Of a stretch of 64,000 nt of DNA, positions 13,129 to 57,938 are shown one piece after another. Position numbers and translations under genes: made by a program. The stretch is taken from assembly GCF_947568905.1 (NCBI RefSeq), contig NC_079170.1, positions 1,798,001-1,862,000 of the forward strand, given 5' to 3'. The notes under the pieces are model-generated. The model was not told where the DNA came from and searched no databases. It was given only the letters and a program-made list of their open reading frames with translations. The DNA is from Ostrea edulis. Lineage: Eukaryota. Positions within the stretch are counted from its first letter, which is position 1; each line of letters opens with the position of its first letter.

Positions 13129-15719
13129 TTACGGTGATCGTAAGGCGGCTGCAACATCTTCCCAAAAGCTGTCTAAGTCTTGTACCTGTTGAACCTCTGG
13201 CCATCTTATACTGAATATGCACCACCAGATATACCGCAAGTCTTTCGGCATTCTTTCTATTGGAATGTTGTCCTTGATAATCACTATGATGGATCGTTTT
13301 CGACGGTTATGAAAAGCATGGGTCACCGCCATCTGGACGGCGTACGAATTCCAACCACTGTCTAGGAAATTTTCTGTGATGACAAAGACAACTTTCCGAC
13401 TGTGGTCAATACCCTGCACCAGCTGTTCAGCTTTATTCACTCCAGGAATAAAGTCTTTATCGGGAATGCTAATTTGAAATCCTAAATTTGTCAGCGCTTG
13501 ATACATTGTTGTGCAAACCAACTGGTAATCATCTTCAGAGTACGATATGAAAGCATCAAACTGGAAGGTGTTACTCTCATCTGAACGTACCACACCTTTC
13601 CATCTGTTACGCAGACGTAAAACGACATAGTCAACATGCACACGATATCTCTTGATAGCAATTCTAATCACCAGTCCAATTATTATAAAAAACAACATCA
13701 AGGAAGAAGTAATCAACCACACCCCAGTTTGACATTTCTTTTCGAAAATAGCAAATTGTTTTACTTGAAGGAGTTCTGAAAAATTCGAAGATTTTTCGAT
13801 GCAATCGGTTTTGTTAAGATCCGCAAAGAGATGCTGATGATTCTTCATCCAACGAAGCATAGAAATATGACTACAGTCACAATCTAAAATGTTTCCTTGG
13901 ATGAAAATGTTTACTCTTTTAAGACTTCGAAGTACACGAAAGTCGGATGTTTCTAATGACTTGATTTTGTTATTTTGAATGTATAATTCTTTGAGGTTTC
14001 GTAAATGTGTCACTGCTTTGGGAATGGATGATAAGCAATTGTTATTAAGGTAAAGGAACTTTAACTTTGTTTGTTCTTTGAATAAAGTGGTTGGAAAATG
14101 ATGAATAAAATTATCCTGTAAATCTAAGAGTTCTAAGTTTTTGAGACTGTCGAATAAAGCTCTTTTGCTTGATTCGGCTATAAAACCGAATTTCATTTTT
14201 GACGCTCGCAAAACCTTTAATTTGTTTAAGGGTTTAAAAATCTGGGAAGAAATATTGGTGCAGTCATTGTCGGAAATGTTCAAAACTTCTAAGTGGGGAA
14301 AGTCCATTTGCCAAATCATACTACAAGGAAAACTTGTTCCATACAGGTCCAGCTCTTGTAAAACCTCACCTACAATGGTCAACTGAAACTGATAAAGAGC
14401 AGGTACTCTGTGCATATAATTGTTGGAATACCGTATTACTTTCAAAACATTTGAAAGAGTGAACGTAATATTTGACTTCCAAATTGAATAGTCTAGAAAT
14501 GAGCCGCTGGTTATATCACTAATACACACATTTTTGTGATTAACAATGAGATACTGGAGTTTAGGGTAATTTTGCAAGGAATCTATCACAAAGGACGGTT
14601 CAATATACCCAATAGGATTTTGGGAAATGTCCAAATATTCAATGCATCTTCCAAATGTAGATTTAAGTAAATTTACAGATATGCTTGTAATCAAGTTTTT
14701 ACTAAGATCGATAAACTTGACACACACGTTAAAGAGATATATAGAATTACTTTCATTTAATATGAGGTGTTGTCTAACAAGAGCTGGAATATTTGAGGCT
14801 GCGATGATTTTTTCAATCTTTCGATTTTGCAAGCACTTTAACGTTTTTAGCACAGCATTCAAATCGCATAGACCCCCAAAACTTATCGTAGTCCTCTTTA
14901 GAAAAGGAAATGAGCACAGTATATCTTCACTGACATTACATTGTACGTGATGATCAAATTTCATTGTCAGATTATCAATGGGAGATTCCGATAATCCATT
15001 AAACGTGTTGTTGTTTAAGTAAAATCTAGAAATTGGGTAAAATTTAAGTTTCCGTAAATGCTTTAAACTTTGAATGTGCTTCTGAATGTAAATCCTTTAA
15101 ACACGTCGATGTGCAATTCTGTTAAAGACGATAGTCGTGATAGTTCGTTTTCCGGATAGGTATAATTAAAAACGTGACCATAAAATTCATTGCCATGTAT
15201 GTAGAGAATTCTCAATTTCTTCAGATACGAAAATGCCCACTTTCTTGGGGTGTATACTTTCAATTTGCAAAACGAAAGGTCGAGAACGCACAGCCTAGGA
15301 AGACGCCTGAAAGAAAATCTATCTATACATTTTATGGCATTGTTCTTCAAATATAATGCTGAGACATTCCTTAATAAAGTTGTTTTGATGCCTGCAAATG
15401 TTTTTGTTGATATCCAAGTAAACTTATTCCATGAAAGGTCAATTGATACTGTTTCGCCTTTAAACATTGTATTGAAATCAAGAGGAATCCTTCGATAGTT
15501 GAGGTGCCTGCAATTCCACAACCAACCCCGGTTTCCACACTCATCTCTCTGATGTGTAACTTTACAAAGACTTTCTCCTGTTGTAACTGCATCTAAAATA
15601 AAGGTTTTAATGTAATATGAAAAGGATGATGGAATTCAAATTTTCAAATAGAAATGCATACACTTACAATTAACTTGAAGCATCGTAAAGAACAATGTGT
15701 AACAGACGTTCCACTTCAT
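13129..15719 (-). pseudogene. TLR: Toll-like receptor B1, single frameshift
   Basis: Exon 1 15719-15668 (MKWNVCYTLFFTMLQVN, GTAAGT), 75-bp intron, exon 2 from 15592. ORFs 15063-15521 and 13129-14964 join if one base missing at ~15068 is restored (aaacttt vs aaacgttt in B2/B3). LRRs, LRRCT (GNILDCDC), TM and TIR (FDAFISY, PDKDFIPG, FWED) otherwise intact. Could be a sequencing error. Confidence 0.85.
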
Positions 15720-16329
15720 CTCCCAATTCTCTACACATTCACCTTCTATCTCAATTGAAATCGGTCTGGTATCATCAACAATTAAGCAGTGCTAGTTTCC
15801 TTTTTGATTTTAATTAAGGAAATGTGTCTAGCAACAAAACTGAAAAGCATGCATAAGATGTTGACGAATAGTTCTAGCGGGAACATATATAAAAATCAAA
15901 TTAACGTAACAAGTACTAATTGTAGCAGGGAACAATAAAAACACCAAAAGCAAACAAATTTTTTTGCCTTCAAGCAAGTGTTCTGTGTTCTTACAGGTAC
16001 CTCTAAACGAATTTATTAAGAAACAAAAAATGTATAGAAGCTGAAATATCATTAATTGAGAATGTGCATGCACACAAAGGCTTGTTGTGAATTATGACTA
16101 TGTTTATTAATTAAAAATCTTTAGATTTACGTACAGTCTAATCATCAGCATATTTAATCCGATATATAAGGTGACTGTTCGTTGTCTTCATCTCTCATAT
16201 AGAGAATAATTTAGCGATTCCTGTTATTGACTAATGTTATATTATGTATGTCTTTTTTGCTCCTCAACATACAATTTTCGTGTTTTTTTTAAAATAAGTA
16301 TCCCTCTGAACAGCGATGTTATGATCGCA

Positions 16330-17664
16330 ACGATACATTGCCGGATCCAGTAAAAATTCTACCAAGCCCCTATCTTTGCTCCTCGCGAACATATCAACAG
16401 CTGTGAAGGAGAAACCTCAAACGTACTGTGCGACTACTTATGCCAGAAGTGGTGAAAATCAAATGTGCATTCTGAAACATTCTAAATAACTTTTAGGAAA
16501 CTTGAAATCACAAAACTTTTCTTAAATCAACAACACCAAAACGTATGCCTTTTCAACTATTTACACGATCATTCCTCACCATAAATTAAAGTTTAGACTT
16601 ATTGACATCAAAGACTGTTCCTTCTTGAACAAAAATGAAAAACGCAAATATTCCTAACTAGTGATCAATCATCCAAAAAACTACTTTGTTAAACGCCACT
16701 CTGATTTATCTCACAAGCATCCTGAAGCTGAAATACAAAGATGCTGGAGTTCCTCATTGACATTATCTTCGTGGTTTTTGGTGATCAGGTCTTCCAACAG
16801 TCTGTTGGAATACCCATGGGCACGAATTCTGCTTCTGTGCTAGCTGACCTGTTTTGTATTCCTTTGAAGCAGAATTTGATCAAAAACTTCTACACGGGAA
16901 GACAAAATCGACATTTAGATATCGATAATGTATTATCTATTAACAATAATAATTTTCATTCATATGTCAATTCAATGTAAAATGGCTGAAATATTGCCAA
17001 AACGGCGTGAAACCTCGATCAATATATTCAATATATCTCAGTGTACTTGAAATAAAAGAAAACACAGAGTCGTCCGATTTTGCTTCATACGTAGATATTT
17101 TATTGAAAGTCGATCTTAACGGGAAACTAACAACCCAACTGTATGACAATACGGATGATTTCAACTTCTCCATTGTCAACTTCCCATATTTATGTAGCAA
17201 TATTCCATTATCACCTGCATATGGTGTTTACATTTCTCAACTGAAGCAATACGCAATATCTTCTTCTGCATATGGTCAGTTTGTAAATTGAAGCAAGCTA
17301 CTGACAAACAAGTTGATGGTACATGGGTTTCAACAGTATCGATTGAAGTCAGCATTTCGCAAATTCAATGGTCATTATAAGGATATTGTTCGTCAATGCA
17401 ACATATCACTGGGTCAAATGCTGTCTGACGTGTTTCATACCAATTGTTAGACCGTTTTCGGCACACTGAATTTGACTACGGAGAACTCTGTTTACCTTAT
17501 CAGGATATAGGGTTCACGGCGGGTTTGACCGGTCGACAGGGGATGCTTACTCCTCCTAGGCAACTGATCCCACTGCTGATGTGCCCAGGGGTCCGTGTTT
17601 GCCCAACTATACATTTTGTATTGCTTATAAGAGTTTTGAGATTGATCACTGTTCGTTATCTTCA
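16330..17664 (+). mobile_element. 5'-truncated Naiad-like PLE (C-terminal RT plus ~200-nt terminal region)
   Basis: Broken frames give STKPLSLLL, YARSGENQM.ILK, TY.FST.YT.IPH, QQSVGIPMGTN, (Y)IDD-like motif, DDFNFSIVNFPYLCSNIPLSPAYGVYISQL, ending VFHTNC-stop with no endonuclease after it. Confidence 0.75.
16977..17023 (+). mobile_element. Short SINE-like 3' tail inside the Naiad RT (copy 38477-38529 with CAATTC TSD)
   Basis: gtaaaatggctgaaatattgccaaaacggcgt(a/g)aaacc..caat interrupts NFHSYVNSIY coding sequence. Confidence 0.5.
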
Positions 17665-17909
17665 TATTCCAAATAAGATGAAGCTCCACTTAACACTACT
17701 TAGTGACAAATACAGCTTAGGAATTTTTTTTTTTACATTTAATACAATTTGTTTCCAGAGATGTATATTGACAAGAAAAAAGCAAGCCCGGAAAAATTGT
17801 GGTGACCAACTTGAATCAGTAATTTCAATATTTGTAAATAACCTTGTAATCTGAGTGTGCCCCAGATATTGAATTTACTACGATATTCGCCATCATTCTT
17901 TTCTCCGAT

Positions 17910-20797: not shown

Positions 20798-23449
20798 TCA
20801 AACTGAGGCCAAGGTGGTAGCAAGATCTTCCCAGAAACCATCCATTAGTTCTAAAGTATCTGGCCACCTGATGCTCAATATGCACCACCAGATATATTGC
20901 AAGTCTTTTGGCATTCTTTCTATTGGAATGTTGTCCTTGATAATCACTATGATGGATCGTTTTCGGTTGTTATGGAAGGCATGGGTCACCGCCATCTGGA
21001 CGGCATACGAATTCCAGCCACTCTTTAGAAAGTTTTCTGTAATGACCAAAACGACTTTTCGACTGTGGTCAATAGATTGTATCAGCTGGTCAACCTTTGA
21101 CATTCCAGGGATGAAGTCTTTATCAGGTAGGCTTATTTCAAAACCTAAATTTGTCAGGGCTTGATAAAGGGTTGACGTCACCAGCTTGTAGTCATCTTCA
21201 GCGTATGATATGAAGGCATCGAACTCAAAGCTTTTGTTCTTGGGCAAATGTATACCTTTCAATCTGTTACGAATACGCAGAATAATGTAGTCCACATGCA
21301 CGCGGTATCTCTTTATAAGCGCTGATACAATGATTAAGGCATTTATTAAAACTAACATAGAGGAAGAAAAGAGTAACCACATTTGAGATTGGCATTTCTT
21401 CTCAAATTCTGCAAAATTTTCTTCATCGAATAGTTTTGAAATTGTGGATGATTTTTCCATGCATTCAGTTTCATGCAAATCTCCAAAGAGATGCTGATTG
21501 TTTTTCATCCATCGAAGTGAGGAGATGTGTAAACAATCACAATTTAAAGGGTTTCCTTTGATAAAGATCTGCGCTTTTTTGAGATTCTGGAGTGTGTGAA
21601 AATCAGAGGGTTTCAATGACGAAATTTTGTTAGATTGAAGATATAAATGCGTTAGGTTGAGTAAAGGTTCCACTGCAGATGGAATAGACGATAGATAGTT
21701 GTTCTCAAGATAAAGACCGGATAAATGTGTTTGATCTTTCAAAAGAGATGGCGGAAGTTTATGAATGAAAAGCTTTCGCAGGTCTAGCTGACGAAGGTTT
21801 TTCAGACCTCGGAAGATTTTACTCATGTTTAGTCCAGCATTTAAATTCATGTTCGTGTTTGACGCTCCAAATTGTTCCAATTTTGTTGTTTGTTGTAATA
21901 ACTGAAACGAAATATCACTGCAGTTGTTGTCAGAAATATCAAGAATTTGCAACTGGGGGAAATTCATCTGCCTAAGAATTCTAAATGGAAAATTTGTTTG
22001 AGACATATTCAGCACCTTTAACCCTTCGCCTACAAAGTTCAAATAAATCTTATAAGAATCACTGAGAACGTGAATGTGATTGTGAGAAAATAGCAAAGTT
22101 TCTAATTCCTTTGAGAACGTAAATGTAAAAGTCGGTGTCCCGTTCAAATGCGTTTGGACTGAATCATCAGCGATATCCGCCACACACCTTATGTTATTAA
22201 AACTAAGATCTAAGTATTTTAGTTTAGGGTAATTTTGCATCAAATTGAGCACAATAGAGAAATCTATAACTTCAATCCTGTTACGGGAGAAATTAAGATG
22301 TTCAATACATTTTCCCATAGTTGATCCATGTGGTTCTACAGAAATACCTGCGATTCGGTTACTGCTAAAATCTACTTCCTTGACGCAGACACTCAGTAGA
22401 TATTCGCAATTACTTTCATTTAGAATAAAAGGTTGGCGAACAATATATGGAACATTTTCAATAGCATGTATATAGTCTATCCTTCGGTTTTGCAGACACT
22501 TTAAGGTTCTAAGTACTACACTCAAGCCACATATACCTCCAAAGTTCATTTCAACACCCTTTAGATATGGAAAATAACAAAAGAGATATTCACTGACGTC
22601 ACAATGCACGTCGTACACAAATATCATCCTCAAGTTATGGATGGGTGAATCTGATAATCCGCTAAATGTGTTGTTGGTTAAGTGGAACATGGACCCGGTG
22701 GTATAGAATTCCACATCGCTCAATCTTTTTAGACGTTTGAAATCGCTTTTAAAGATAAATCCTTCAAATACATCAATATGAAGCGTTTTCAAAGATAGCA
22801 ATCTTGTTATTTCTCGATCAGGATAACCTTTACGTTTGTTGCGGATTTTGTGAAAGACATTGCCTTGTGCGTATAAAATTTCCAATTTTCCAAGATTTGA
22901 GAATGCACATTCTCTGAGAGAAGCTGTGTGAAGTTTACAGTATGAAACATCCAGAACACACAGTTTATACAGCCATTTAAAAGAAAAGCTCTCTATAATT
23001 TGTAGATCATTATATCTGAAGTATAAAGCTGTTACGTTCCTCAAAAGCCCTTTCTTGACACCTGTGAAAGTAGGTTGGGAAATCGATGTAAACTTATTTC
23101 TGGAGAGGTCAATCGAAAACGTTCTGCCTTCAGTTTTTTCTGTGGTGAAACTAGGAATTCGTTTTAAGTTCAATTGACTACAATTCCATAACCATCCGCT
23201 ATTATTGCATTCATCTGTATGAGGTTGACGTCTACAGTTTGCTTCTTCATTGCTTTCTAAACCTTAAAATATTGAAGATGTTTAGAATGAAGTATAAACA
23301 CCATGCAAACAGGTCTATAAAACAAATGTTAAAATTCAATTATCTCAAAGGACATGAATATTCTGAATTACATATATTAAAATCTTGAAACACTTACTTG
23401 AAATTCGAAAAAGAATTATTAGGCAGCAAGTAAATTGTGTTGTTATCAT
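20798..23449 (-). CDS. TLR: Toll-like receptor A2, intact, single-cysteine-cluster type, ~838 aa, two exons (23449-23398, 23262-20798)
   Basis: The 791-aa ORF starts at a TTG, but the frame is open up to an AG acceptor at 23263-23264; a 52-nt exon with GTAAGT donor gives an in-phase signal peptide. LRRNT (C..C..WLWNC), LxxLxLxxN repeats, LRRCT GNPLNCDC, TM WLLFSSSMLVLINALIIVSALI, TIR box1 FDAFISY, BB loop DFIPG, box3 FWEDL. Confidence 0.95.
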
Positions 23450-27239: not shown

Positions 27240-28460
27240 AAAAGAAATCAAATCTAGACAATGCATGCTTCAGTTTTTTTTAAAGAGATTTGAAACAATA
27301 TTCCATATGATTTAGCTAGACGTCCATGTACGATGATATCGGATACAGAAAGTCTGAACATTTGTCTCGTCTCGAAGGGAAAAAAAGAAAACAGTTTTAC
27401 GAAGACGTTATACTAGGGACTTAATTAAAAACGGAATTAACAAAGTAAAATCACATGAAAAAATACCTTCTTACAGTGAAAAATGCATGTAAATCTACCA
27501 ATTGTGTCATACCATACGTTTCAACACATAACCCTAAAAATCCGAAAGATTTTAAAACTTATCAAAAATAACTTTTCTATCTTAGAAGCCAACAAGGACA
27601 CGAAAAACAAAATCATCAATAGTAAAGGACAGAAACCTTCATTAAAATTCATTCTAACCAGAGACTGTTTTATCAGTAATATCAAAGAAATCCTATCATC
27701 ACTAAATGCAACAAAACAAGATGCGCTACATGCCCGTACATAGTACAAGGGTCCCAATTTTTCTGGTAAAACGGAAGTAACTTTACGGTAAAAACGTCAA
27801 GACATGCAGTAGCCCCCCACCTTATGGTATTATCTGTTCCAGATGTTGTGAGAATTACATGCACATCTGGTGCATCAAAATTGGTACCGTATAAGTTTTA
27901 CATTATGACTGGTGGACTGTTAGTCCCCGAGGGTCTCTACAGCCCAGTAGCTAAGTACTTCGTTTCTAGCTTGAAAATACGGATGTATATTTAGTTGCTG
28001 TTATAAAATGTAGAAATTCATTAAAAAAAATTAAGGATAATCTCCCTCACGCATAGATCTTATCCTTAGTAGAATTTGACTCCACTTTCTTTGGCACACT
28101 GTTTTCCCTATAATAGCCCTTAAACTTCATTGTTATTTCGGATTTTGAATCGGTTGAGCATCACTGCAGAGGTATTATTTGTCGAAATGCGCATCCGGTG
28201 CATCAAAATTGGTACCGTATAAGTTTTACATTGGCCACACAGAAGACACCGTGAGACACCGCACGATCGTTCACCAACAGATCCCAAAACCTAAATACCA
28301 GTGCACCCATGTATTAAGCAAACGCATTAGAACTGTTGCAAAAACATAAATCCTCATGTGATCGTTTTCCCATTTATAAATTTAACAATGGCCAACAGAA
28401 AAAGAAACCAAAAAAAAAATATTCACTCAAAAATATAAACCTTACTTGAATGCTACATAA
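27240..28460 (+). mobile_element. Unit II copy of the GIY-YIG PLE remnant
   Basis: Collinear with 5690-6935, interrupted by R2. Confidence 0.72.
27861..28231 (+). mobile_element. Retrozyme-like repeat R2 (unit II copy of R1, small internal deletion)
   Basis: Same insertion site as R1, same CTGCAGA core mutation, ends at TTTTACAT. Confidence 0.85.
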
Positions 28461-28846: not shown

Positions 28847-29483
28847 CAAATAATGTCTCTTCAGTGATGCTTGAAAATACGGATGTATATTTAATTGCTG
28901 TTATAAAATTTAGAAATTCATTTCAAAATTAAGGATTATCTCCCTCATGGATAACTCTTATCCTTAGACGAATTTGACACCACTTTTTGGCACACTGTTT
29001 TCCCCTATAATAGCCCTAAAACTTCATTGGTATTACGGATTTCAAATATGTCGTTTGAGCATCACTGAAGAAACATTATTTGTCGAAATGCGCATCTGGT
29101 TCATCAAAATTGGTACCGTATAAGTTTTACATTATGACCCCTGGGTCGAGGCCTCTGCTGGTGGACTATTAGTCCCGGAGGGTCTCTACAGCCCAGTAGC
29201 TAAGTACTTCGTTACTAGCTTGAAAATACGGATTTATATTTAATTGCTGTTATAAAATTTAGATATTCATTTCAAAATTAAGGATTATCTCCCTTATGCA
29301 TAGCTCTTATCCTTGGATGAATTTGGCTCCACTTTTTTGGCACGCTGTTTTTGGCTATATTTAGCTCTAAAATTTCATAGTTATTTCGGATTTCAAACAT
29401 TTCGGTTGAGCATCACTGAAGAGACATTATTTGTCGAAATGCGCATCTTTTGCATCAAAATTGGTACCGTATAAGTTTTACAT
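28847..29483 (+). mobile_element. Retrozyme-like repeat R4 (unit II copy of R3) with two HHRs
   Basis: CTGAAGA cores at 29065 and 29416; cleavage sites 29096 and 29447 (351 nt apart); same 5' inverted piece. Confidence 0.87.
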
Positions 29484-32400
29484 CATAGACAGTTGCTTCT
29501 TTAATAAAAATGGAAAATGCAAATATTCCTATCTAGTGATAAGTCATCCAAAAAAAAAACATACTTTGCTTTCACACACAATTATCCTGAAGTTGAAATA
29601 AAAAATATGCTAGAGTTCCTCATGGAAAATATCTTCGTGGTCTTTGGTAATCAGGTCTTCCAACAATCTCTTGGAATGCTAATGGTTACGAATTCTGCTT
29701 CCTTGCTAGCTGACCTGTTTTTATATTCATTTGAAGCAGAATTTATTTAAAAACTTCTACACGAGAAGAAATAATCGACATTTAGCTATATAGATGATAT
29801 ATTATCTATTAACTTTAATTCTTTTCATTCATGAAAGGTGAAGATAACGAACAGTGATCAATCTCATAAATCCTATAAGCAATACAAAATAGATCGTTTG
29901 GCAAACACGGACCCCTGCCCACACCAGAGATGGCATCAGGTGTCTAGAAGGACTAAGCGTCCCCTGTTGACCGGTCACACCCGCCGTGAGCCCTATATCC
30001 CGATCAGATAAACGAAGTTATACGTAGTCCAAATCAGTGTGCCAAGAACGGTCTAACAATCGGTATGAAACATGCCAGCCAGCATCTGACCCAATGATAG
30101 GTTGTATTATCAATTCAATACATCCCAGTCAACTCGAAAAGACGCCACAGGGTCGTCCACTTTCGCTTCATACTAAGATATTTAATTGAAAATAGATATT
30201 AACGGCAATCTAACAACTCAACTTCATGACAAACGGGATGATTTCAGCATCTCTATCGTCAACTTCCCATATTTATGTAGCAATATTCCATTATCACCTG
30301 TATATGGTGTTTCTATATCTCAAATGATTTGATATGCAATAGCTTGTTCTACGTATGTTCAGTTCTTAAATCGAGGAAGTCTACTGACAAACAGCCTGAT
30401 GGTGGAGGGGTTGTTTTAAATCAGCATTTAGTAAATTCTATGGTCGTTATAACGATCTAGTTTGCCAATACAACCTATCATTGGGATAAATGCTGGCTGA
30501 CGTGTTTCATGCCGTTTGCTATGTCATTCTTACACAATGTCTAATTAGGTCGAAAACTGAATAACTACTAAATCTTAAACCTATATTTATATGATTTAAT
30601 TCTTATTATATCCTTGTCTCTGATCGATCACATTCCAATTGAGAAATGCAGGTTATTTTTGTATAATCTGGTTTGGTATAGGGACATACCCCCTTGACAA
30701 CCAGATGCCGGAACTATTTTTCTATCTCTAAATGTACATCGCAGCACTGTTTTCAGCCTTCGATGGACTAGATAATCAGCGTGAACAATAAGTTACTTTG
30801 GTTTGATACACATATTGTTTTCTCCTTGTCAATATTAGCATCTACTTGTACGAAAATAACTGTTGTAAAACATCTTTTTCTGTATGATGGTTGAAAAATA
30901 GATTAAAACTAAGATATTATATCAGTTTTGATGATTTACAAAGTAAGCACTGTTCTGTACATTTTGAAATGCATTTCTCACTGGGGAGAGGGGGTCAGTG
31001 CTTGTTCCGCCTTTCAACAAAACAAACAAAAAATAATACGTCACATTTTATCACATGACGTTAGTCACATTGACATGTGGATCGCAATTTGCCACTTGCT
31101 TATACCTGAAGGGTGAAAATAACAAACAGTGATCAATCTAATAACTCCTATAAGCAATACAAAATAGATAGTTGGGCAAACACGGACCCCTGAACACATC
31201 AGAGGTGAGATCGGGTGCCTAGGAGGAGTAAGCAACGGACCGGTCACACCCGCCGTGAGCCCTATACCCTGATCAGGTAAACGGAGTTATCCGTAGTCCA
31301 AACCAGTGTGCCAAGAACGGCTTAACAATCGGTATGAAACATGTCAGACAGCATTTAACCCAATAATAGGTTGTACTGATGAACTAGATCATTATAACGA
31401 CCATAGAATTTGCGAAATGCTGACTTCAATTGAGACTGTTGAAACCCCTGTACCATCAACTTGTTTGTCAGTAACTTGCCTTGATCTAAAAAACAAAAAT
31501 GACTATACACAGAACAAGCTCTTGCTTATCGAATGAGCTACATATAATTTCTTGTGTTGGATTTAATAATAGCGACAACGTTGCATGCAATGGCAAGTTT
31601 TCATGATGTAGAATTCTTTACAGAGTTAAATGTCTCAAAGTATTGTAATTTCCGATATTTGAAGATGTATTTTGGGTAGGCCTAAACAATGGAAGTTCCC
31701 GTATTTTTTCAATGTGTCGGAGATGAGAGACTTCAAAGTCGATCTCTATTTCTAAAGGGCAACGAAAGACACATTGCATGTATAGTCTACACATATTTTC
31801 TATCATGACAAACTTCACCTTCGATACAATATTTTTATCAATAGGCTAGGTTCGTAGACCTACATTGTAAGATTAAAGATGGCGAGCTTCACAGCTAGAC
31901 GCTTCGTCATTGTTGCTAAGTAAATCATTACGCGGCTCAGTTGACTTGTATTTTTCCGAGTTTATGTACATTATGATAAACGAAGGTTAGTATCTTTGTC
32001 TCTTGTATTAAATCATAAGGAACTACTTTAATTTTAGGGCAAGTTATACGAGTATAACCTGGTTTGGGTCAGTGTGCGCTCTTTGATAATCCGTTTCGCT
32101 TCGAGGATTATAAATCGTAAACTGATCCAAACCAGGTTGTACTCGCATAACTTGTCCCAGAATTAAATTCATTTCTTAAATATTTCTCTGGAAGTTTGAT
32201 AAGCATCAAAGTTCTGGCAATCATTTTTACAAAACAGAATGCATGAACACCAAAGATGATTTTCATGTAAGCTTTCCAACTTCATTTATAAAAGTAATAT
32301 TTCCCAAAGTCGCATGCATTAGTTACATCGGTTCTGTAACATGTCAAAATGCTTACTCTCAAGCTTTACTGTAGTTCATTCATATATATTTTGATATATC

Positions 32401-34651: not shown

Positions 34652-37243
34652 TTACGGTGATCGTAAGGCAGCTGCAACATCTTCCCAAAAGCTGTCTAAG
34701 TCTTGTACCTGTCGAACCTCTGGCCATCTTATACTGAATATGCACCACCAGATATACCGCAAGTCTTTCGGCATTCTTTCTATTGGAATGTTGTCCTTGA
34801 TAATCACTATGATGGATCGTTTTCGACGGTTATGAAAAGCATGGGTCACCGCCATCTGGATGGCGTACGAATTCCAACCACTGTCTAGGAAATTTTCTGT
34901 GATGACAAAGACAACTTTCCGACTGTGGTCAATACCCTGCACCAGCTGTTCAGCTTTATTCACTCCAGGAATAAAGTCTTTATCGGGAATGCTAATTTGA
35001 AATCCTAAATTTGTCAGCGCTTGATACATTGTTGTGCAAACCAACTGGTAATCATCTTCAGAGTACGATATGAAAGCATCAAACTGGAAGGTGTTACTCT
35101 CATCTGAACGTACCACGCCTTTCCATCTGTTACGCAGACGTAAAACGACATAGTCAACATGCACACGATATCTCTTGATAGCAATTCTAATCACCAGTCC
35201 AATTATTATAAAAAACAACATCAAGGAAGAAGTAATCAACCACACCCCAGTTTGACATTTCTTTTCGAAAATAGCAAATTGTCTTACTTGAAGGAGTTCT
35301 GAAAAATTCGAAGATTTTTCGATGCAATCGGTTTTGTTAAGATCCGCAAAGAGATTCTGATTATTCTTCATCCAACGAAGCATAGAAATATGACTACAGT
35401 CACAATCTAAAATGTTTCCTTGGATGAAAATGTTTACTCTTTTAAGACTTCGAAGTACACGAAAGTCGGATGTTTCTAATGACTTGATTTTGTTACTTTG
35501 AATGTATAATTCTTTGAGGTTTCGTAAATGTGTCACTGCTTTGGGAATGGATGATAAGCAATTGTTATTAAGGTAAAGGAACTTTAACTTTGTTTGTTCT
35601 TTGAATAAAGTGGTTGGAAAATGATGAATAAAATTATCCTGTAAATCTAAGAGTTCTAAGTTTTTGAGACTGTCGAATAAAGCTCTTTTGCTTGATTCGG
35701 CTATAAAACCGGATTTCATTTTTGACGCTCGCAAAACCTTTAATTTGTTTAAGGGTTTAAAAATCTGGGAAGAAATATTGGTGCAGTCATTGTCGGAAAT
35801 GTTCAAAACTTCTAAGTGGGGAAAGTCCATTTGCCAAATCATACTACAAGGAAAACTTGTTCCATACAGGTCCAGCTCTTGTAAAACCTCACCTACAATG
35901 GTCAACTGAAACTGATAAAGAGCAGGTACTCTGTGCATATAATTGTTGGAATACCGTATTACTTTCAAAACATTTGAAAGAGTGAACGTAATATTTGACT
36001 TCCAAATTGAATAGTCTAGAAATGAGCCGCTGGTTATATCACTAATACACACATTTTTGTGATTAACAATGAGATACTGGAGTTTAGGGTAATTTTGCAA
36101 GGAATCTGTCACAAAGGACGGTTCAATATACCCAATAGGATTTTGGGAAATGTCCAAATATTCAATGCATCTTCCAAATGTAGATTTAAGTAAATTTACA
36201 GATATGCTTGTAATCAAGTTTTTACTAAGATCGATAAACTTGACACACACGTTAAAGAGATATTTAGAATTACTTTCATTTAATATGAGGTGTTGTCTAA
36301 CAAGAGCTGGAATATTTGAGGCTGCGATGATTTTTTCAATCTTTCGATTTTGCAAGCACTTTAACGTTTTTAGCACAGCATTCAAATTGCATAGACCCCC
36401 AAAACTTATCGTAGTCCTCTTTAGAAAAGGAAATGAGCACAGTATATCTTCACTGACATTACATTGTACGTGATGATCAAATTTCATTGTCAGATTATCA
36501 ATGGGAGATTCCGATAATCCATTAAACGTGTTGTTGTTTAAGTAAAATTTAGAAATTGGGTAAAATTTAAGTTTCCGTAAATGCTTTAAACGTTTGAATT
36601 TGCTTCTGAATGTAAATCCTTTAAACACGTCGATGTGCAATTCTGTTAAAGACGATAGTCGTGATAGTTCGTTTTCCGGATAGGTATAATTAAAAACGTG
36701 ACCATAAAATTCATTGCCATGTATGTAGAGAATTCTCAATTTCTTCAGATACGAAAATGCACACTTTCTTGGGGTGTATACATTCAATTTGCAAAACGAA
36801 AGGTCGAGAACGCACAGCCTAGGAAGACGCCTGAAAGAAAATCTATCTATACATTTTATGGCATTGTTCTTCAAATATAATGCTGAGACATTCCTTAATA
36901 AAGTTGTTTTGATGCCTGCAAATGTTTTTGTTTATATCCAAGTAAACTTATTCCATGAAAGGTCAATTGATAGTGTTTCGCCTTTAAACATTGTATTGAA
37001 ATCAAGAGGAATCCTTCGATAGTTGAGGTGCCTGCAATTCCACAACCAACCCCGGTTTCCACACTCATCTCTCTTATGTGTAATTTTACAAAGACTTTCT
37101 CCTGTTGTAACTGCATCTAAAATAAAGGTTTTAATGTAATATCAAAAGGATGATGGCATTCAGATTTTCAAACAGAAATCCACACACTTACTATAAACTT
37201 GAAGAATCGTAAAGAAAAGTGTGTAACAGACGTTCCACTTCAT
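34652..37243 (-). pseudogene. TLR: Toll-like receptor B2, early nonsense mutation
   Basis: Exon 1 37243-37192 (MKWNVCYTLFFTILQVY), 75-bp intron, exon 2 from 37116. TCA>TAA at 36934-36932 (WIS>WI*) after ~78 aa; the downstream 740-codon frame is intact, with 10 aa differences from B1 over the shared 611 aa. Confidence 0.87.
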
Positions 37244-37839: not shown

Positions 37840-39172
37840 CATTGCTGGATCCAGGAAACATTCTACTAAGCACCATCTGTGCTCCTTGCGAAAATATCAA
37901 CAGCTGTGAAGACGAAACCTCAAACGTACTGTGCGACTACATATGCAAGAAGTGGTGAAAATCAAATGTGGATTCTAAAACATTCTAAAGAACTTTTAGG
38001 AAACTTGAAATCAGAAAAAATTTTCAAATCAACAACATCAAAACGTATGCCTTTTCAACTCTTTACACGACCATTCCTCACGATAAATTAAAGACTAGAC
38101 TTATTCATATCATAGACAGTTCCTTCTTGAACAAAAATGTAAAATGCAAATATTCCTATCTAGTGATCAATCATCCAAAAATACTTTGTTAAAGGCCACT
38201 CTGATTTCACTCACAAGTATCCTGAAGTTAAAATAAAAAATATACTGGAGTTCCTCATTGACATTATCTTCGTGGTCTTTGGTGATCAGGTCTTTCAACA
38301 GTCAGTTGGAATTCCCACGGGCACGAATTGTGCTTCTGTGCTAGGTGACCTGTTTTATATTCTTTTGAAGCAGAATTTATTCAAAAACCTCTACACGTGA
38401 AGACGAAATCGACATTTAGATATATCGATGATGTAGTATCTATTAAGAATAATACTTTTCATTCATATGTCAATTCTTCGCCGTAAAATGGATGATATAT
38501 TGCCAAAACGGCGTAAAACCTCAATCAATCAATTCAATATATCTCAGGGAACTCGAAATAAAAGACACCACATAGTCGTCCGCTTTTGCTTCATACTTTG
38601 ATGTTTTATTGAAAGTCGATATTAACAGGAAACTAACAACCCGACTTTATGACAAACGGGATGATTTCAACCTCTCAATTGTTAACTTCCCATATTTATA
38701 TAGCAATATTCCATTATCACCTGCATATGGTGTTTACATTTCTCAACTGATTCGATACGCAATATCTTCTGCGTATGATCAGTTTTTAAATTGAGGCAAG
38801 CTACTGACAAACACTTGGTGGTACAAGGATTTCAACAGTCTCGATTGAAGTCAACATTTTGCAAATTCAATGGTCGTTATAACGATATAGTTCGTCAATG
38901 CAACCTATCATTGGGTGAAATGCTGTCTGGCATGTTTCATACCGATTGTTAGGCCGTTTTCGGCACACTGATTTTTACTACGAAGAACTCCATTTACCTT
39001 ATCAGGATATTGGGCTCACAGCGGTTGTGACCGGTCGTCAGGGAATGCTTACTCATCCTAAACACCTGATGCCACCTCTGGTGTGTCCAGAAATCCGTGT
39101 TTTGCCCAACTATCTATTTTGTATTGTTTGTTGGAGATATGAGATTGATCACTGTTCGTTTTCTTTGCCTCT
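37840..39172 (+). mobile_element. Unit II copy of the Naiad-like PLE upstream of B2
   Basis: ORFs 37879-38091 and 38609-38794; RYIDDVVSI at ~38418; same terminal sequence. Confidence 0.75.
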
Positions 39173-39815
39173 CATGAGACCGATTGAATATCGGATCGGA
39201 TCAGTCAATGTTCGAATTGGCCTGCTTGTCCGTGATTCGGAACTGGTGGTATGTTTCAGAACAGACCTATTGACTTGGTCCGGAAATGCATTTAGACCTG
39301 TGATCTTTACAACAATTGTCAGATAAATTATATAAATGTTTCATTTGAGAAATTTCTGATCTTCTCATAAGAAGAATGAAACCAAAATTATCTTCGTGTT
39401 ACCGCCAGCAATCGTTAATGAAAATGTGATCCGGAACTAGGCAAATGACAGTATATTTAGTCTTGAAATAGCAATTACACATGTATGTAAATGTACAAAT
39501 ACAATTTTAAATACATTCACTGAATTTTGTTATTCATTTCTTCATCAAATAAGGAACTTCTATACACAGTGCTTTGAACACGTAAACTAAGCAACATATT
39601 ATCACATTTGTGGTTTAAACAATGTCTTAGAGAAACACAACCTGCTGGGTGTCAAGTTCCTATTTATTCCCATATTTTCCTATAAATTTGAAGGTTCCTA
39701 TATTTTCCCTATAATTCATTAAAATCCCTATAAAGCCCTATATATCCAACAACAAGAAATGAGTCCTATTTTCAAAAATGATAAGAAAAAAAATTTTGGA
39801 GCTGATGCCAGATTG

Positions 39816-40590
39816 TTATGGAAAAGTCATATAGAATCACTTATGAACAAGATTTCCAAGAGAATTGGCATTTTAAGAAGAATAAGATATTTTATGTCAA
39901 ACGATGCGTTGCTGAAGATTTTTAATACTATGATTTGTCCACATTTTACATATTGTTGTACTATATGGAGCAATCCAAGAAATGCTGAAAATGTGAATAA
40001 GCTTTTTATATTGCAAATCCGAGCTGCAAGGGTAATTCTTAACATCAGAAATTTTGAAACACCATCTAATGTCATGTTTACAGAACTTAACTGGTTGCCT
40101 CTATCAGATTACTTTGTCTATAGAAAAGTAATTTTAGTGTATAAAGTTTTACATGGTTTAATGCCAGATTATTTAAATGTTTTTAAATATGTTTCAGAAG
40201 TCAGTCAGAGGCAAACTAGAAATTCTTATTCAAATATATTGTATATACCCAGGGCAAAAACAGAATATTATAGAAGATCTTTCAGCATTTCAGGGAGCAC
40301 AGTGTGGATTGCCTTGAGTCAAAATATAAGAAACTCAACGAGTGTTGCGTGTTTTAAGAGAAATTATCTTAGAGATTATCACCATACTTTTTAAGCTTCA
40401 TTTTGCATTCTATTTATCTTACATTCATAATTATTTCTTAAGTTTATATGTATTCTACTTCTTTTAATCTGTGTTTATTTTACTAATATCTGTCTATGTA
40501 TGTTATAAACAGGACCACATTGAAAACTAGCGTTATCGCTAAATATGCAATCCTGGATAAATAAAGGTCTTATTATTATTATTATTATTA
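39816..40590 (+). mobile_element. 5'-truncated CR1/L2-clade LINE with (TTA)n tail
   Basis: ORF 39759-40394: WKSHI..ISKRIGIL, PHFTYCCTIW, LQIRAARVI, LNWLPL, YRRSFSISGSTVW; 3' UTR ends in AATAAAGGTC(TTA)n; ttatg at both junctions; unique to this spacer. Confidence 0.8.
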
Positions 40591-43590: not shown

Positions 43591-46243
43591 TCAAACTGAG
43601 GCCAAGGTTGTAGCAAGATCTTCCCAAAAACTATCCATCAGTTCTAAAGTATCTGGCCACCTTATGCTCGATATGCACCACCAGATATATTGCAAGTCTT
43701 TTGGCATTCTTTCTATTGGAATGTTGTCCTTGATAATCACTATGATGGACCGTTTTCGGTGGTTATGAAAGGCATGGGTCACCGCCATCTGGACGGCGTA
43801 CGAATTCCAGCCACTCTTTAGAAAGTTTTCTGTAATGATGAAAACGACTTTTCGACTGTGGTCAATAGATTGTACAAGCTGGTCCACCTTTGACCTTCCG
43901 GGGATGAAGTCTTTATCAGGTAGGCTTATTTCAAAACCTAAATTTGTCAGGGCTTGATAAAGGGTTGACGTCACCAGCATGTAGTCATCTTCAGCGTATG
44001 ATATGAAGGCATCGAACTCAAAGTTTTTGTTCTTGGGCAAATGTATACCTTTCAATCTGTTACGAATACGCAGAATAATGTAGTCCACATGCACGCGGTA
44101 TCTCTTTAGAAGCGCTGATACAATGATTGAGGCATTTATTAAAACTAACACAGAGGAAGAAAAAAGTAACCACATTTGAGATTGGCATTTCTTCTCAAAT
44201 TCTGCAAAAGTTTCTTCATCGAATAGTTTTGAAATTGTGGATGATATTTCCATGCATTCAGTTTTATGCAAATCTCCAAAGAGATGCTGATTTTTTTTCA
44301 TCCATCGAAGTGAGGAGATGTGTAAACAATCACAATTTAAAGGGTTTCCTTTGATAAAGATCTGCGCTTTTTTTAGATTCTGGAGTGTGTGAAAATCAGA
44401 GTGTTTCAATGACGAAATTTTGTTAGATTGAAGATATAAATGCGTTAGGTTGAGTAAAGGTTCCACTGCAGATGGAATAGAAGATAAATAGTTGTTCTCA
44501 AGATAAAGACCGGATAAATGTGTTTGATCTTTCAAAAGAGATGGCGGAAGTTTATGAATGAAAAGCTTTCGCAGGTCTAGCTGACGAAGGTTTTTCAGAC
44601 CTCGGAAGATTTTACTCATGTTTAGTCCAGCATTTAAATTCATGTTCGTGTTTGACGCTCCAAATTGTTCCAGTTTTGTTGTGTGGTGTAATAACTGAAA
44701 CGAAATATCAGTGCAGTTGTTGTCAGAAATATCAAGAATTTCTAATTGGGGGAAATTCATCTGCCTAAGAATTCTAAATGGAAAATTTGTTTGAGACATA
44801 TTCAGCACCTTCAATCCTTCGCCTACAAAGTTTAAATGAATCTTATAAGAATCACTGAGAACGTGAATGTGATTGTGAGAAAATAGCAATGTTTCTAATT
44901 CCTTTGAGAACGTAAATGTAATAGTCGGTGTCCCGTTCAAATGCGTTTGGACTGAACCATCAGCGATATCCGCCTCACACCTTATGTTATTAAAACTAAG
45001 ATCTAAGTATTTTAGTTTAGGGTAATTTTTCATCAAATTGAGCAAAATAGAGAAACCTATAACTTCAATTCTGTTATGGGAGAGATTAAGATGTTCAACA
45101 CAATTTCCCATGGTTGATCCATGTGCTTCTACGGAAATACCTGCAATTCGGTTGCTGCTAAAATCTATTTCCTTGACGCAGACACTCAGCAGATATTCGC
45201 AATTACTTTCATTTAAAATAAAAGGTTGACGGATAATATGCGGAACATTTTCAATAGCATGTATATAGTCTATTTTTCGGTTTCGCAGACACTTTAAGGT
45301 TCTAAGTACTACACTCAAGCCACACTTACCGCCAAAGTTCATTTCAACACCCTTTAGATATGGGAAATAACAAAAGAGATATTCACTGACGTCGCAATGC
45401 ACGTCGTACACAAATATCATCGTCAAGTTATGGATGGGTGAATCTGATAATCCGCTAAATGTGTTGTTGGTTAAGTGGAACATGGACCCGGTGGTATAGA
45501 ACTCCACATCGCTCAATCTTTTTAGACGTTTGAAATCGCTTTTAAAGATAAATCCTTCAAATACATCAATATGAAGCGTTTTCAAAGATAGCAATCTTGT
45601 TATTTCTCGATCAGGATAACCTTTACGTTTGTTGCGGATTTTGTGAAAGACATTACCTTGTGCGTATAAAATTTCCAATTTTCCAAGATTTGAGAATGCA
45701 CATTCTCTGAGGGAAACTGTGTGAAGTTTACAGTATGAAACATCCAGAACACACAGTTTATGCAGCCATTTAAAAGAAAAGCTATCTATAATTTGTAGCT
45801 CATTATATCTGAAGTATAAAGCTGTTACGTTCCTCAAAAGCCCTTTCTTGACACCTGTGAAAGTAGTTTGGGAAATCGATGTAAACTTATTTCTGGAGAG
45901 GTCAATCGAAAACGTTCTGCCTTCAGTTTTTCCTGTGGTGAGACTAGGAATTCGTTTTAAGTTCAATTGACTACAATTCCATAACCATCCGCTATTATTG
46001 CATTCATCTGTATAAAGTTGACGTCTACAGTTTGCTTCTTCATTGCTTTCTAAAACTTAAAAATATTGAAGATGTTTAGAATGAAGTATAAACACCATAC
46101 AAACAGGTCTATAAAACAAATATTAATATTTAATTATCTCGAAGAACATGGATATTCTGAAATACATCTATTAAAATCTTGAAACACTTACTTGAAATTA
46201 GAAAAAGAATTATCAGGCAGCAACTAAATTGTACTTTTATCAT
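43591..46243 (-). CDS. TLR: Toll-like receptor A3, intact, ~838 aa, two exons (46243-46192, 46055-43591)
   Basis: Same architecture as A2; exon 1 MIKVQFSCCLIILFLIS with GTAAGT donor, AG acceptor at 46056-46057; complete LRR-LRRCT-TM-TIR without stops. Confidence 0.95.

Positions 46244-55271: not shown

Positions 55272-55275
<4 letters not shown>

Positions 55276-55347
<72 letters not shown>
55276..55347. repeat. (AT)n microsatellite at the B3 stop codon
   Basis: ~35 AT units with one C interruption. Confidence 0.95.
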
Positions 55348-57938
55348 CGGTGACCGTAAGGCGGCCGCAATGTCTTCCCAAAAACTGTCCATCGCCTGTA
55401 CCTGTTGAACCTCTGGCCATCTTATACTGATTATAAACCACCAGATATATCGCAAGTCTTTCGGCATTCTTTCTATTGGAATGTTGTCCTTGATAATCAC
55501 TATGATGGATCGTTTTCGACGGTTATGAAAAGCATGGGTCACCGCCATTTGGACGGCGTACGAATTCCAACCACTGTCTAGAAATTATCTGTGATGACAA
55601 AGACAACTGTCCGACTGTGGTCAATACCCTGCACCAGCTGTTCAGCTTTATTCACTCCAGGAATGAAGGCTTTATCGGGAATGCTAATTTGAAATCCTAA
55701 ATTTGTCAGCGCTTGAAACATTGTTGTGCAAACCAACTGGTAATCATCTTCAGAGTATGATATGAAAGCATCAAACTGGAAGGTGTTACTCTCATTAGAA
55801 CATACCACACCTTTCCATCTGTTACGCAGACGTAGAATGACATAGTCAACATGAACACGGTATATCTTGATAGCAATTCTAACCACCAGTCCAATTGTTA
55901 GAAACAACAACATCAAGGAAGAAGTAATCAACCACACCCGAGTTTGGTATCTCTTTTCGAAAATAGCAAATTGTCTTACTTGAAGAAGTTCTGAAAAATT
56001 CGAAGATTTTTCGATGCAATTGGTTTCATTAAGATCCGCAAAGAGATTCTGATTATTCTTCATCCAACAAACCATAGACATATGGCTACAGTCACAATCT
56101 AAAATGTTTCCTTGGATGAAAATGTTTACTGTTTTAAGACTTCGAAGTACACGAAAGTCGGATGTTTCCAATCACTTGATTTGGTTACTTCGAATGTATA
56201 ATTCTTTGAGGTTTCGAAAATGTGTCACTGCATTTGGAATGGATGATAAAAAATTGTAATTAAGGTAAAGGAAATTTAATTTTGTTTGTTCTTTGAATAA
56301 AGTAGTTGGAAAATGATCAATAAAATTGTGCTGTAGATCTAACAGTTCTAAGTTTTTGAGACCGTCAAATAAAGCCCTCCTGCTTTATTCGGCTATCAAA
56401 TTGGAATTCATTTTTGATGCTCGCAAAAGTTTTAATTGTGTTAGGGGTTTAAAAATCTGAGACGAAATATTGGTGCAGTCATTGTCTGAAATGTTCAAAA
56501 CTTCTAAGTGGCAAAAGTTCATTTGCCTAATCCTACTACAAGGGAAACTTGTTTCATACAGGTCCAACTCTTTTAAAGCCTCACCTACAATGGTCAACTG
56601 AACCTCATACAAATCAAGTCCTCTGTGCATATAATTGAAGGAATATAGTATTACTTTCAACAATTTTGAAAGAGTGAGCGCAATATTTGCCTTCCAAATC
56701 CAATGGTCTAGAAATGAGACGCTGATTACATCTCTAATGTCCACATTGTTGTGATCAAGATTGAGATACTGGAGTTTAGGATAATTTTTCAAGAAATCTA
56801 CCGCAAACGACGGTTCCATATACCGAATGTGATTTTGGGAAATGTCCAAATGTTCAATACATCTTCCAAATGTAGATTTAAGTAAATTTACAGATATGCC
56901 TGCAATCCCGTTATCACTAAGATCGATAAATTTGACACAGACGTTCAAGAGATATTTACAATTATTCTCATCTGTTATAAAAACTTGTCTTATAAAAACT
57001 GGAATATTTGAGGCTGCGTAAATTTCTTCCATCCTTCGATTTTGTAAGCACTTTAACGTTTTTAACACCGCATTCAAGTCGCATAGACCCCCAAAACTCA
57101 TCGTAGTTCTCCTTAGAAAAGAAAATGAGCACAATATATCTTCAATGACTTCACGTCGTACGTGATGATTAAACTTCATTGTCTGATTAAAGATGGGAGA
57201 TTCCGATAATCCATTAAACGTGTTGTTGTCTAAGTAGAAAATGGATGAAGTTGGGTAAAATTTCAGTTTACTTAAATGCTTTAAACGTTTGAATTTGCTT
57301 CCGAATCTAAATCCTTCAAACACATCGATGTGCAATTCTGTTAAAGACGATAGTCGTGATAGTTCGTTCTCCGGATAGCTATAATTAAAAACGTGTCTAT
57401 CAAATTCATTGCCATGTATGTAGAGAATTTTCAATTCACCCAGATACGAAAATGCCCCCTTTCTTGGGGTGTGTATTTTCAAGTTGCAAAACGAAAGGTC
57501 AAGAACGCACAGCCTAGGAAGACGCCTGAAGGAAAATCTATCGATACATTTTATGTCATTGTTCTTCAAATATAATGCTGAGACATTTCTTAATAAAGTT
57601 GTTTTGATGCCTGCAAATGTTTTTGTTGATATCAAAGTAAAATTATTCCATGAAAGGTCAATTGATACTGTTTCGCCTTTAAACATTGTATTGAAATCAA
57701 GAGGAATCCTTCGATAGTTGAGGTGACTACAATTCCACAACCAACCCCGGTTTCCACACTCATCTCTCTGATGTGTAACTTTACAAAGACTTTCTCCTGT
57801 TGTAACTACATCTGAAATAAAGGTTTTCATGTAATATCAAAAGGAAGATGAAATTCCGATTTTCAAATAGAAATGCATACACTTACAATTAACTTGAAGC
57901 ATCGTAAAGAACAATGTGTAACAGACGTTCCACTTCAT
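55345..57938 (-). pseudogene. TLR: Toll-like receptor B3: open signal peptide + LRR frame (~492 aa), decayed LRRCT/TM/TIR
   Basis: Exon 1 57938-57887, exon 2 from 57811. Lesions: TCA>TAA 56387-56385, TCA>TGA 56174-56172, 1-bp deletion ~55581, and the native stop replaced by (TA)n at ~55345. Confidence 0.9.

What the first reader, a model, noticed from the sequence alone, without database searches (positions are those of the whole stretch)
13129..57938. A paired TLR module: divergent ectodomains, homogenised TIR
Seen: A and B alternate in every unit and share exon sizes (52 nt + 2465 nt), but their LRR regions are very different. In the TIR, A2 20910-20965 and B1 13247-13302 are identical over 56 nt, within a ~144-nt stretch showing about 10 differences, synonymous sites included; the flanking TIR sequence is clearly more diverged. 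Established: gene conversion homogenises the C-terminal/TIR part of tandem TLR1/TLR6-type paralogues in vertebrates. Inferred: repeated A-B conversion keeps signalling surfaces matched, as expected for a co-acting pair with different ligand surfaces.
Basis: partly seen in the sequence, partly recalled or inferred. Interest (0 to 1): 0.75.

Follow-up and report, generated by a model that had tools for sequence, protein, structure and literature searches.

The report
Short gene-conversion patch in oyster TLRs
Two neighbouring Toll-like receptor genes of the flat oyster, long diverged elsewhere, share a 138-base near-identical patch in their signalling domain that is best explained by one old copy-and-paste (gene conversion) event, an ordinary process in tandem immune-gene arrays.

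Summary
The window is Ostrea edulis OX387710.1:1,798,001-1,862,000. It holds three ~22-kb tandem units, each with an A-type and a B-type TLR gene on the minus strand.

**Observation: confirmed.**
- The 56-nt identity, the ~10 differences in ~144 nt, the 52 + 2465 nt exons and the A/B alternation all check out.

**Gene conversion: supported.**
- Among codons encoding the same residue in A and B, only 3-4 of 38-39 differ inside the 138-nt tract (A2 20879-21016).
- Elsewhere 46-50% of such codons differ.
- Saccostrea and Crassostrea relatives, and an O. edulis paralogue 4 Mb away, have saturated synonymous divergence in the same tract. A nucleotide-level constraint is therefore unlikely.

**"Repeated conversion matching a co-acting pair": not supported.**
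- All A-B pairs are about equally distant (7-11 mismatches), which fits one event before the unit was amplified.
- The direction was probably B to A.
- The tract encodes the most conserved protein segment of this TLR family across oyster species, so conversion changes almost nothing at protein level.
- B1, B2 and B3 each carry disabling lesions in this assembly, although one B copy upstream is intact.
- No RNA data were available.

**Verdict:** a new member of a known kind (compare vertebrate TLR1/TLR6), and of modest interest.

The parts
1..2128 (-). A1: A-type TLR, a pseudogene. Its TM/TIR end is cut off by the window edge. Exon 1 is 2077-2128 and exon 2 starts at about 1940.
   Evidence: 94% identical to A2 and A3. 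It has a stop at reference codon 454, a 1-nt deletion and an 18-nt insertion. Exon 1 and its donor were checked.
13129..15719 (-). B1: B-type TLR. Exon 1 is 15668-15719 and exon 2 is 13129-15592 (2464 nt). The frame is broken by a 1-nt deletion near 15068.
13216..13353 (-). Conversion tract in B1 (138 nt).
   Evidence: 7-9 mismatches to A3 and A2.
20798..23449 (-). A2: intact A-type TLR (838 aa). Exon 1 is 23398-23449, the intron is 135 nt and exon 2 is 20798-23262.
   Evidence: It is 99% identical to NCBI 'toll-like receptor 2 [Ostrea edulis]' (P0001).
20879..21016 (-). Conversion tract in A2 (138 nt, 46 codons). It aligns with the alphaC - betaD - DD loop - alphaD part of the TIR, between box 2 and box 3.
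34652..37243 (-). B2: B-type TLR. Exon 1 is 37192-37243, the intron is 75 nt and exon 2 is 34652-37116 (2465 nt). It has a single nonsense codon at 36932-36934.
   Evidence: The nonsense letter was not seen in contigs of three other runs.
34739..34876 (-). Conversion tract in B2.
43591..46243 (-). A3: intact A-type TLR. Exon 1 is 46192-46243 and exon 2 is 43591-46055.
43672..43809 (-). Conversion tract in A3.
55345..57938 (-). B3: B-type TLR pseudogene. Exon 1 is 57887-57938 and exon 2 is 55345-57811. It has two nonsense codons (reference codons 484 and 555), a 1-nt deletion in the TIR near 55581, and its stop codon has changed from TAA to TAT.
55432..55569 (-). Conversion tract in B3.

Best explanation
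A and B are old tandem paralogues of a single-cysteine-cluster Toll-like receptor in the flat oyster. Their synonymous sites are saturated (pS about 0.6-0.8). A single short non-crossover (ectopic) gene-conversion event copied about 138 nt of the TIR-coding sequence between the two lineages, most likely from B into A. This happened after B split from the C-type genes further along the array and before the A-B unit was amplified into the present tandem copies. The patch fell where it did because this segment (alphaC to alphaD of the TIR) is the most conserved protein segment of the family. It therefore offered the longest stretch of pre-existing nucleotide identity for heteroduplex formation. 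The event changed little or nothing in the protein and is best seen as a by-product of array recombination, not a device that keeps a receptor pair compatible. Shown here: the tract, its two boundaries, the deficit at synonymous sites, the absence of that deficit in the controls, and the equal distance of all A-B pairs. Inferred: the mechanism, the direction and the timing.
For: (1) Nei-Gojobori pS between A and B is 0.18-0.26 in the tract and 0.53-0.67 in the rest of TM+TIR. Along the whole gene it stays at 0.65-0.8 and dips only here. (2) Among codons with the same residue in both genes, 3-4 of 38-39 differ in the tract. In the rest of the gene 46-50% differ (P 2e-7 to 1e-5), and in the rest of TM+TIR 37-46% differ (P 2e-5 to 2e-3). 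(3) The controls show no deficit. O. edulis against Saccostrea or C. virginica has tract pS 0.75-1.0. O. edulis paralogue D, 4 Mb away, has 0.66-0.77. B against C has 0.39 in the tract and 0.35 in the flanks. (4) Both boundaries lie inside the coding sequence: the 5' flank is 77% identical, and the 3' tail is 60% identical with a 6-nt indel. That is a patch, not a single crossover breakpoint. (5) Site patterns AB|C: BC|A are 9-11: 1-4 in the tract and 14-16: 45-51 in the TIR flanks (Fisher P 3e-5 to 1.5e-3). The ectodomain tree is (A,(C,B)) at 100/100 support, and an A+B clade is rejected with AU p = 1.7e-59. The best tract tree is ((A,B),C). (6) Direction: Bx-C1 identity is 88.4% in the tract and 87.4% in the flank, so it is unchanged. 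A2-C1 identity jumps from 78.3% to 88.4%, the same value as B-C. (7) A single old event: all A-B pairs have 7-11 mismatches whether or not the genes are adjacent. Tract pS (0.18-0.26) slightly exceeds the B1/B2-B3/Bx flank pS (0.13-0.17). (8) There is no Rfam match in or around the tract.
Against: The tract holds only about 35 synonymous sites, so direction and timing rest on few changes. AU tests on the 138-nt and 405-nt partitions do not reject the alternative topologies (p 0.20-0.25). Three of the four fixed A/B differences in the tract are non-synonymous (N/H against R, and Q against R). That is odd for such a conserved segment. It could mean two or three shorter patches, or selection after the event. 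pS in the proximal TIR (0.5-0.55) is somewhat below the ectodomain values, so older and wider exchanges cannot be excluded. Only 5 of the roughly 8 or more units of the array were examined for the tract.
Confidence: 0.75

Rival explanations
1. One reading: A and B act together (for example as a heterodimer) with different ligand surfaces, and recurrent A-B conversion is maintained by selection to keep their TIR signalling surfaces matched.
For: A and B are inherited as a unit and alternate through the array. The tract aligns with the alphaC helix and DD loop region of the TLR2 TIR; from my own knowledge, those elements are implicated in TIR-TIR contacts. The B lineage was under purifying selection until recently (TM+TIR pN/pS 0.19-0.31). 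One B copy, Bx (P0003), is intact. The B2 nonsense letter was not seen in three other runs. A vertebrate precedent exists (Kruithof 2007, PMC2077338).
Against: All A-B pairs are equally distant and no pair is recent, so recurrence is not seen. The tract protein is conserved across oyster species without any sharing of nucleotides (pN 0.09-0.13 and pS 0.75-1.0), so selection on residues suffices to keep it matched. The BB loop and box 1 lie outside the tract and differ more between A and B. B1, B2 and B3 are all disrupted in the assembly. There is no expression or interaction evidence.
Confidence: 0.08
2. The tract is a nucleotide-level functional element embedded in the coding sequence (a regulatory RNA structure, small-RNA target or splicing element). 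It would then be conserved by selection on the DNA or RNA, not copied.
For: Synonymous sites are conserved among all A and B copies.
Against: Synonymous sites in the same tract are saturated against Saccostrea, Crassostrea and the O. edulis paralogue D. B against C shows no deficit (pS 0.39 against 0.35; 10/37 against 29%). There is no Rfam match even at E<=1.
Confidence: 0.04
3. Chance, codon bias or a local mutational cold spot within a strongly constrained protein segment.
For: The tract is the most conserved protein segment of the family.
Against: Permutation and Fisher tests restricted to silent codons within TM+TIR give P of 2e-5 to 2e-3. A cold spot or codon bias would also lower pS across species and between B and C, and it does not.
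Confidence: 0.02
4. Several separate, shorter conversion events (a mosaic of two or three sub-tracts), or a wider and older homogenisation of the whole TIR on which the 138-nt patch is superimposed.
For: The fixed A/B differences sit at two codons that split the tract into runs of about 48, 63 and 18 nt. Proximal TIR pS of 0.5-0.55 is lower than in the ectodomain. Other mosaic genes exist in the array, for example C2.
Against: There are too few sites to tell this from one tract followed by four substitutions. pS above 0.5 is near saturation and uninformative.
Confidence: 0.1

Closest known systems
Gene conversion between mammalian TLR1 and TLR6 (Kruithof et al. 2007, PMC2077338), and avian TLR1A/B and TLR2A/B (Huang et al. 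2011, PMC3125219)
   Same: The genes are tandem TLR paralogues in the same orientation. The ectodomains have diverged while the C-terminal part is homogenised at the DNA level. The signal is seen at synonymous sites and as a discordance between the trees of different gene parts.
   Different: In vertebrates the homogenised region is about 300 aa (LRR14/16 through TM and most of the TIR) and arose independently and repeatedly in many lineages. Here it is 46 codons inside the TIR, excludes the BB loop, TM and LRRs, and looks like one event predating array amplification. The oyster genes are not orthologues of TLR1/6; their best solved relatives are TLR3 and the TLR2 TIR, at E 6e-24 and 9e-19.
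Birth-and-death plus domain shuffling in expanded invertebrate immune-receptor arrays (oyster and sea-urchin TLR expansions; zebrafish NLR arrays, PMC4852459 listed)
   Same: This is a large tandem array with intact genes and pseudogenes side by side. Identity between units is mosaic, and there is a hybrid gene, C2.
   Different: The present case is a bounded intragenic patch between two old paralogue types, not an exchange of whole domains or exons.

Membership tests
Toll-like receptor (single-cysteine-cluster type) | Signal peptide, LRR ectodomain with a C-terminal cysteine cap, one TM helix and a cytoplasmic TIR domain with boxes 1-3 | tested here: met
   Pfam LRR_8, LRR_4, TIR and TIR_2 all score above their cut-offs in A2 and B2. 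Exon 1 encodes a hydrophobic leader. The CDC cap motif, the TM stretch, FDAFISY, the DFIPG box and the FW box are visible in the translation. The best solved relatives are TLR3 and the TLR2 TIR.
Interlocus (ectopic) gene-conversion tract | A local excess of identity bounded on both sides within otherwise diverged paralogues | tested here: met
   Identity is 93-95% in the tract, against 77% in the 5' flank and 60% in the 3' tail. Run-length permutation gives P<=1e-4.
Interlocus (ectopic) gene-conversion tract | Synonymous sites are homogenised, and this is not explained by constraint seen in orthologues or distant paralogues | tested here: met
   The tract pS is 0.18-0.26 for A against B. It is 0.75-1.0 across species and 0.66-0.77 against paralogue D.
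Interlocus (ectopic) gene-conversion tract | Phylogenetic discordance between the tract and its flanks | tested here: inconclusive
   The site-pattern switch is significant, and the ectodomain tree rejects an A+B clade. AU tests on the short tract and flank partitions are not decisive (p 0.20-0.25).
TLR1/TLR6-type recurrent C-terminal homogenisation | A homogenised block of about 300 aa from the distal LRRs through TM and most of the TIR | tested here: not met
   The tract is 46 codons. The TM, LRRCT and proximal TIR have pS of 0.5-0.7.
TLR1/TLR6-type recurrent C-terminal homogenisation | Independent, repeated events in different lineages or copies | tested here: not met
   All A-B pairs have 7-11 mismatches. 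Saccostrea and C. virginica paralogues show no significant tract-specific deficit.
Co-acting (heterodimeric) receptor pair | Both partners intact and co-expressed | tested here: inconclusive
   B1, B2 and B3 are disrupted in this assembly. Against that, Bx is intact, and the B2 nonsense letter was not seen in three other runs. No RNA run was available.
Co-acting (heterodimeric) receptor pair | Physical or functional interaction of A with B | not testable with these tools
   This needs co-IP and reporter assays.

The most novel reading that the evidence does not exclude
The alphaC-betaD-alphaD patch is a compatibility module. Array members with newly diversified ectodomains are kept plugged into one shared TIR dimer or adaptor interface by occasional selected conversion, and A and B signal as a heterodimer. 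That would be an invertebrate parallel to vertebrate TLR1/6-TLR2 logic, arising independently.
Probability: 0.07. Interest if true: 0.6.

Novelty: new member of a known kind. Interest (0 to 1): 0.3.

Why it matters
This is a clean, well-controlled example of a short ectopic conversion tract in a mollusc TLR array. My searches of the held paper library found no description of this for bivalves. It shows that TIR-based trees of expanded invertebrate TLR families can mislead about paralogue relationships. It also shows that recombination in such arrays works at several scales: a 138-nt patch, domain hybrids such as C2, and 8-kb homogenised blocks. It does not change how TLR signalling or TLR evolution is understood.

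Tried and rejected
- **Nucleotide-level element.** An Rfam scan of the tract at E<=1 and of the whole window at gathering threshold found nothing. The cross-species synonymous comparison also argues against it.
- **Expression of B2.** No RNA run holds the locus. The one possible RNA run laid no contig on it.
- **Checking the B1/B2 lesions in other individuals.** Only short Logan contigs were available, and paralogous B copies map together. The absence of the B2 nonsense letter is therefore suggestive only.
- **AU topology tests on the tract and TIR flanks.** These partitions are too short to be decisive.
- **Blastn of the Saccostrea locus against the window.** It gave no hit, so protein-guided codon alignments were used instead.
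- **Mistaken allele.** I first took L003 (P0001) for an allele of A2. The 100% match of L008 to the window showed that the window comes from the same assembly and that P0001 is a different copy, A0, one unit upstream.
- **Intergenic ORFs.** Pfam scans of 39759-40391, 17444-17851 and 38946-39323 gave no families.
- **Bug in one count.** The amino-acid identity counts wrongly excluded Asn. For the tract I rely on the direct translations.
Full report
**Where the window lies.** The A2 protein is 99% identical to NCBI 'toll-like receptor 2 [Ostrea edulis]'. A locus fetched for the 611-aa B ORF matches window 24652-46487 at 100%. The window is therefore OX387710.1:1,798,001-1,862,000 of assembly GCA_947568905.1.

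A self-comparison shows three tandem units of about 21.5-22.8 kb. All genes lie on the minus strand, in the order A1-B1-A2-B2-A3-B3. The array continues on both sides:
- A0 (P0001) lies one unit upstream.
- Bx (P0003), an intact B-type copy, lies about 4 units upstream.
- Two C-type genes, C1 (P0002) and C2, lie about 30-40 kb beyond the window end.
- The next paralogue, D (P0128), lies 4 Mb away on the same chromosome.

**Gene models.**
- A2 and A3 are intact. Each has a 52-nt exon 1 encoding a hydrophobic leader, a GTAAGT donor, a 135-136-nt intron and a 2465-nt exon 2.
- B2 has the same 52 + 2465 nt layout with a 75-nt intron.
- Pfam finds LRR and TIR domains in both types. The nearest solved relatives are TLR3 and the TLR2 TIR.
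- A and B proteins align end to end at 55% identity, or about 52% in the ectodomain.

**Lesions.**

| Copy | Lesions |
|---|---|
| A1 | stop codon, 1-nt deletion, 18-nt insertion |
| B1 | 1-nt deletion |
| B2 | one nonsense codon (36932-36934) |
| B3 | two nonsense codons, a 1-nt deletion in the TIR, lost stop codon |

The lesions differ between copies. B-B comparisons give pN/pS of 0.19-0.31 in TM+TIR. The B lineage was therefore constrained until recently, and at least one intact copy (Bx) survives.

**The observation.**
- The 56-nt identity is exact.
- The homogenised stretch is 138 nt (A2 20879-21016 and its homologues in the other copies). A-B pairs show 7-11 mismatches.
- A-B nucleotide identity by region is 62% in the ectodomain, 77-78% in the proximal TIR, 93-95% in the tract and 60% in the 3' tail, which also has a 6-nt indel.
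- Nothing beyond the coding sequence is shared between A and B.

**Is it more than protein-level constraint?** Sliding Nei-Gojobori pS between A2 and B2 is 0.65-0.8 over most of the gene and about 0.5-0.55 in the proximal TIR. It falls to 0.2-0.3 only in the tract.

Among codons that specify the same residue in both genes, the fraction that differs is:

| Region | Codons differing | P against tract |
|---|---|---|
| Tract | 3-4 of 38-39 | - |
| Rest of gene | 46-50% | 2e-7 to 1e-5 |
| Rest of TM+TIR | 37-46% | 2e-5 to 2e-3 |

The same tract was then compared in sequences fetched from Saccostrea echinata, Crassostrea virginica and C. gigas, and in O. edulis paralogue D.
- The residues are very conserved there (pN 0.09-0.13, against 0.21-0.25 in the flanks).
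- The synonymous sites are saturated: pS is 0.75-1.0 across species and 0.66-0.77 against D.
- B against C shows no deficit either (0.39 in the tract, 0.35 in the flanks).
- No Rfam family matches.

Nucleotide-level constraint, codon bias and a mutational cold spot are therefore rejected.

**History.** Over the whole gene, sites that unite B and C against A dominate (about 460-530 against about 180). In the tract the pattern reverses to 9-11 AB|C against 1-4 BC|A (Fisher P 3e-5 to 1.5e-3).
- The ectodomain tree is (A,(C,B)) with full support, and an A+B clade is rejected at AU p = 1.7e-59.
- The tract tree is ((A,B),C) with moderate support, and AU tests on such short partitions are not decisive.
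- Bx-C1 identity is the same in the tract and the flank (88.4% and 87.4%). A2-C1 identity rises from 78.3% to exactly the B-C value of 88.4%. This is what B-to-A transfer predicts. A-to-B transfer would have lowered B-C identity.
- All A-B pairs are about equally distant whether or not the genes are adjacent. Tract pS (0.18-0.26) slightly exceeds the divergence among B copies (0.13-0.17).

One event before the unit was amplified is therefore sufficient. Both boundaries lie inside the coding sequence, and at 138 nt the patch has the size of a single non-crossover tract. That size comparison rests on my own knowledge of metazoan tract lengths.

**Function.** By alignment to the human TLR2 TIR, the tract covers alphaC, betaD, the DD loop and alphaD. 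The BB loop (box 2) and box 1 lie upstream, outside the tract. A and B differ at only two residues within it. One of these (Q in A) is an A-specific change, since R is present in B, C, D and Saccostrea.

This segment is conserved across species without any nucleotide sharing, so purifying selection on residues already keeps the surface matched. Conversion most plausibly occurred here because the identity was highest. I see no evidence that it is maintained by selection or that A and B act as a pair. I also cannot exclude that, because no expression data were found.

Contigs from three other runs all carry a sense codon at the B2 nonsense position and show no B1-type deletion. Paralogous B copies co-map, so this only hints that those lesions are young or polymorphic.

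**Comparison with known cases.** Gene conversion that homogenises the C-terminal part of tandem TLR paralogues is established for mammalian TLR1/TLR6 and for avian TLR1A/B and TLR2A/B (PMC2077338, PMC3125219). Those tracts are about 300 aa long, include the TM and distal LRRs, and recur independently in many lineages. The oyster tract is far shorter and looks like a single event. My searches of the held library found no report for bivalve TLRs.

**Verdict.** Recurrence and the adaptive pair model are not supported. This is a new member of a known kind, of modest interest.

Noticed in passing
L001:17420-19933 (C2, about 30 kb beyond the window end): C2 is a mosaic gene. Its N-terminal LRR part (alignment codon columns 90-240) is 89-96% identical to the B-type copy Bx. 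Its TM+TIR is 92-98% identical to C1. Domain-scale exchange therefore also occurs in this array, in line with the neighbouring note s1-301906.
   Followed up: partly
window 36932-36934 (B2 nonsense codon): All contigs from three other public runs that cover 36933 read the sense letter (TCA, Ser, as in B1, B3 and Bx), and none reads the reference nonsense letter. No row shows the B1 1-nt deletion either. Because paralogues co-map, this only suggests that the lesions are young or polymorphic.
   Followed up: partly
window 7600-15600 against 29100-37100: Units 1 and 2 share an 8-kb block of about 99% identity that contains B1 and B2. It is flanked by 88-97% identity on both sides. This is either block homogenisation between units or a staggered duplication.
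   Followed up: partly
window B1 13129-15592 against B2 34652-37116: The ectodomains of B1 and B2 differ by 15 non-synonymous and 0 synonymous changes. The non-synonymous rate matches the roughly 1% neutral divergence of the surrounding block. About 4 synonymous changes would be expected.
   Followed up: no
window 6310-6705, 7563-7957, 27909-28231, 29088-29483, 61332-61740: A repeat family of about 390 nt occurs in both orientations, at 87-93% identity. An Rfam scan of the whole window at gathering threshold found no family.
   Followed up: partly
window 34703-34904 (the two depth bins that hold the B2 tract, 34739-34876): Summed contig depth in three DNA runs is roughly 3-10 times that of the middle of the gene. 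This fits k-mers shared by many array copies, but summed contig depth is not a copy number.
   Followed up: no
window 55345-55347 (B3): The B3 stop codon has changed from TAA to TAT, in addition to its internal lesions.
   Followed up: no
window 20814-21164 (+): A 116-aa antisense ORF overlaps the A2 TIR. It is listed for A2 only and not for A3 or the B copies, so it is probably chance.
   Followed up: no
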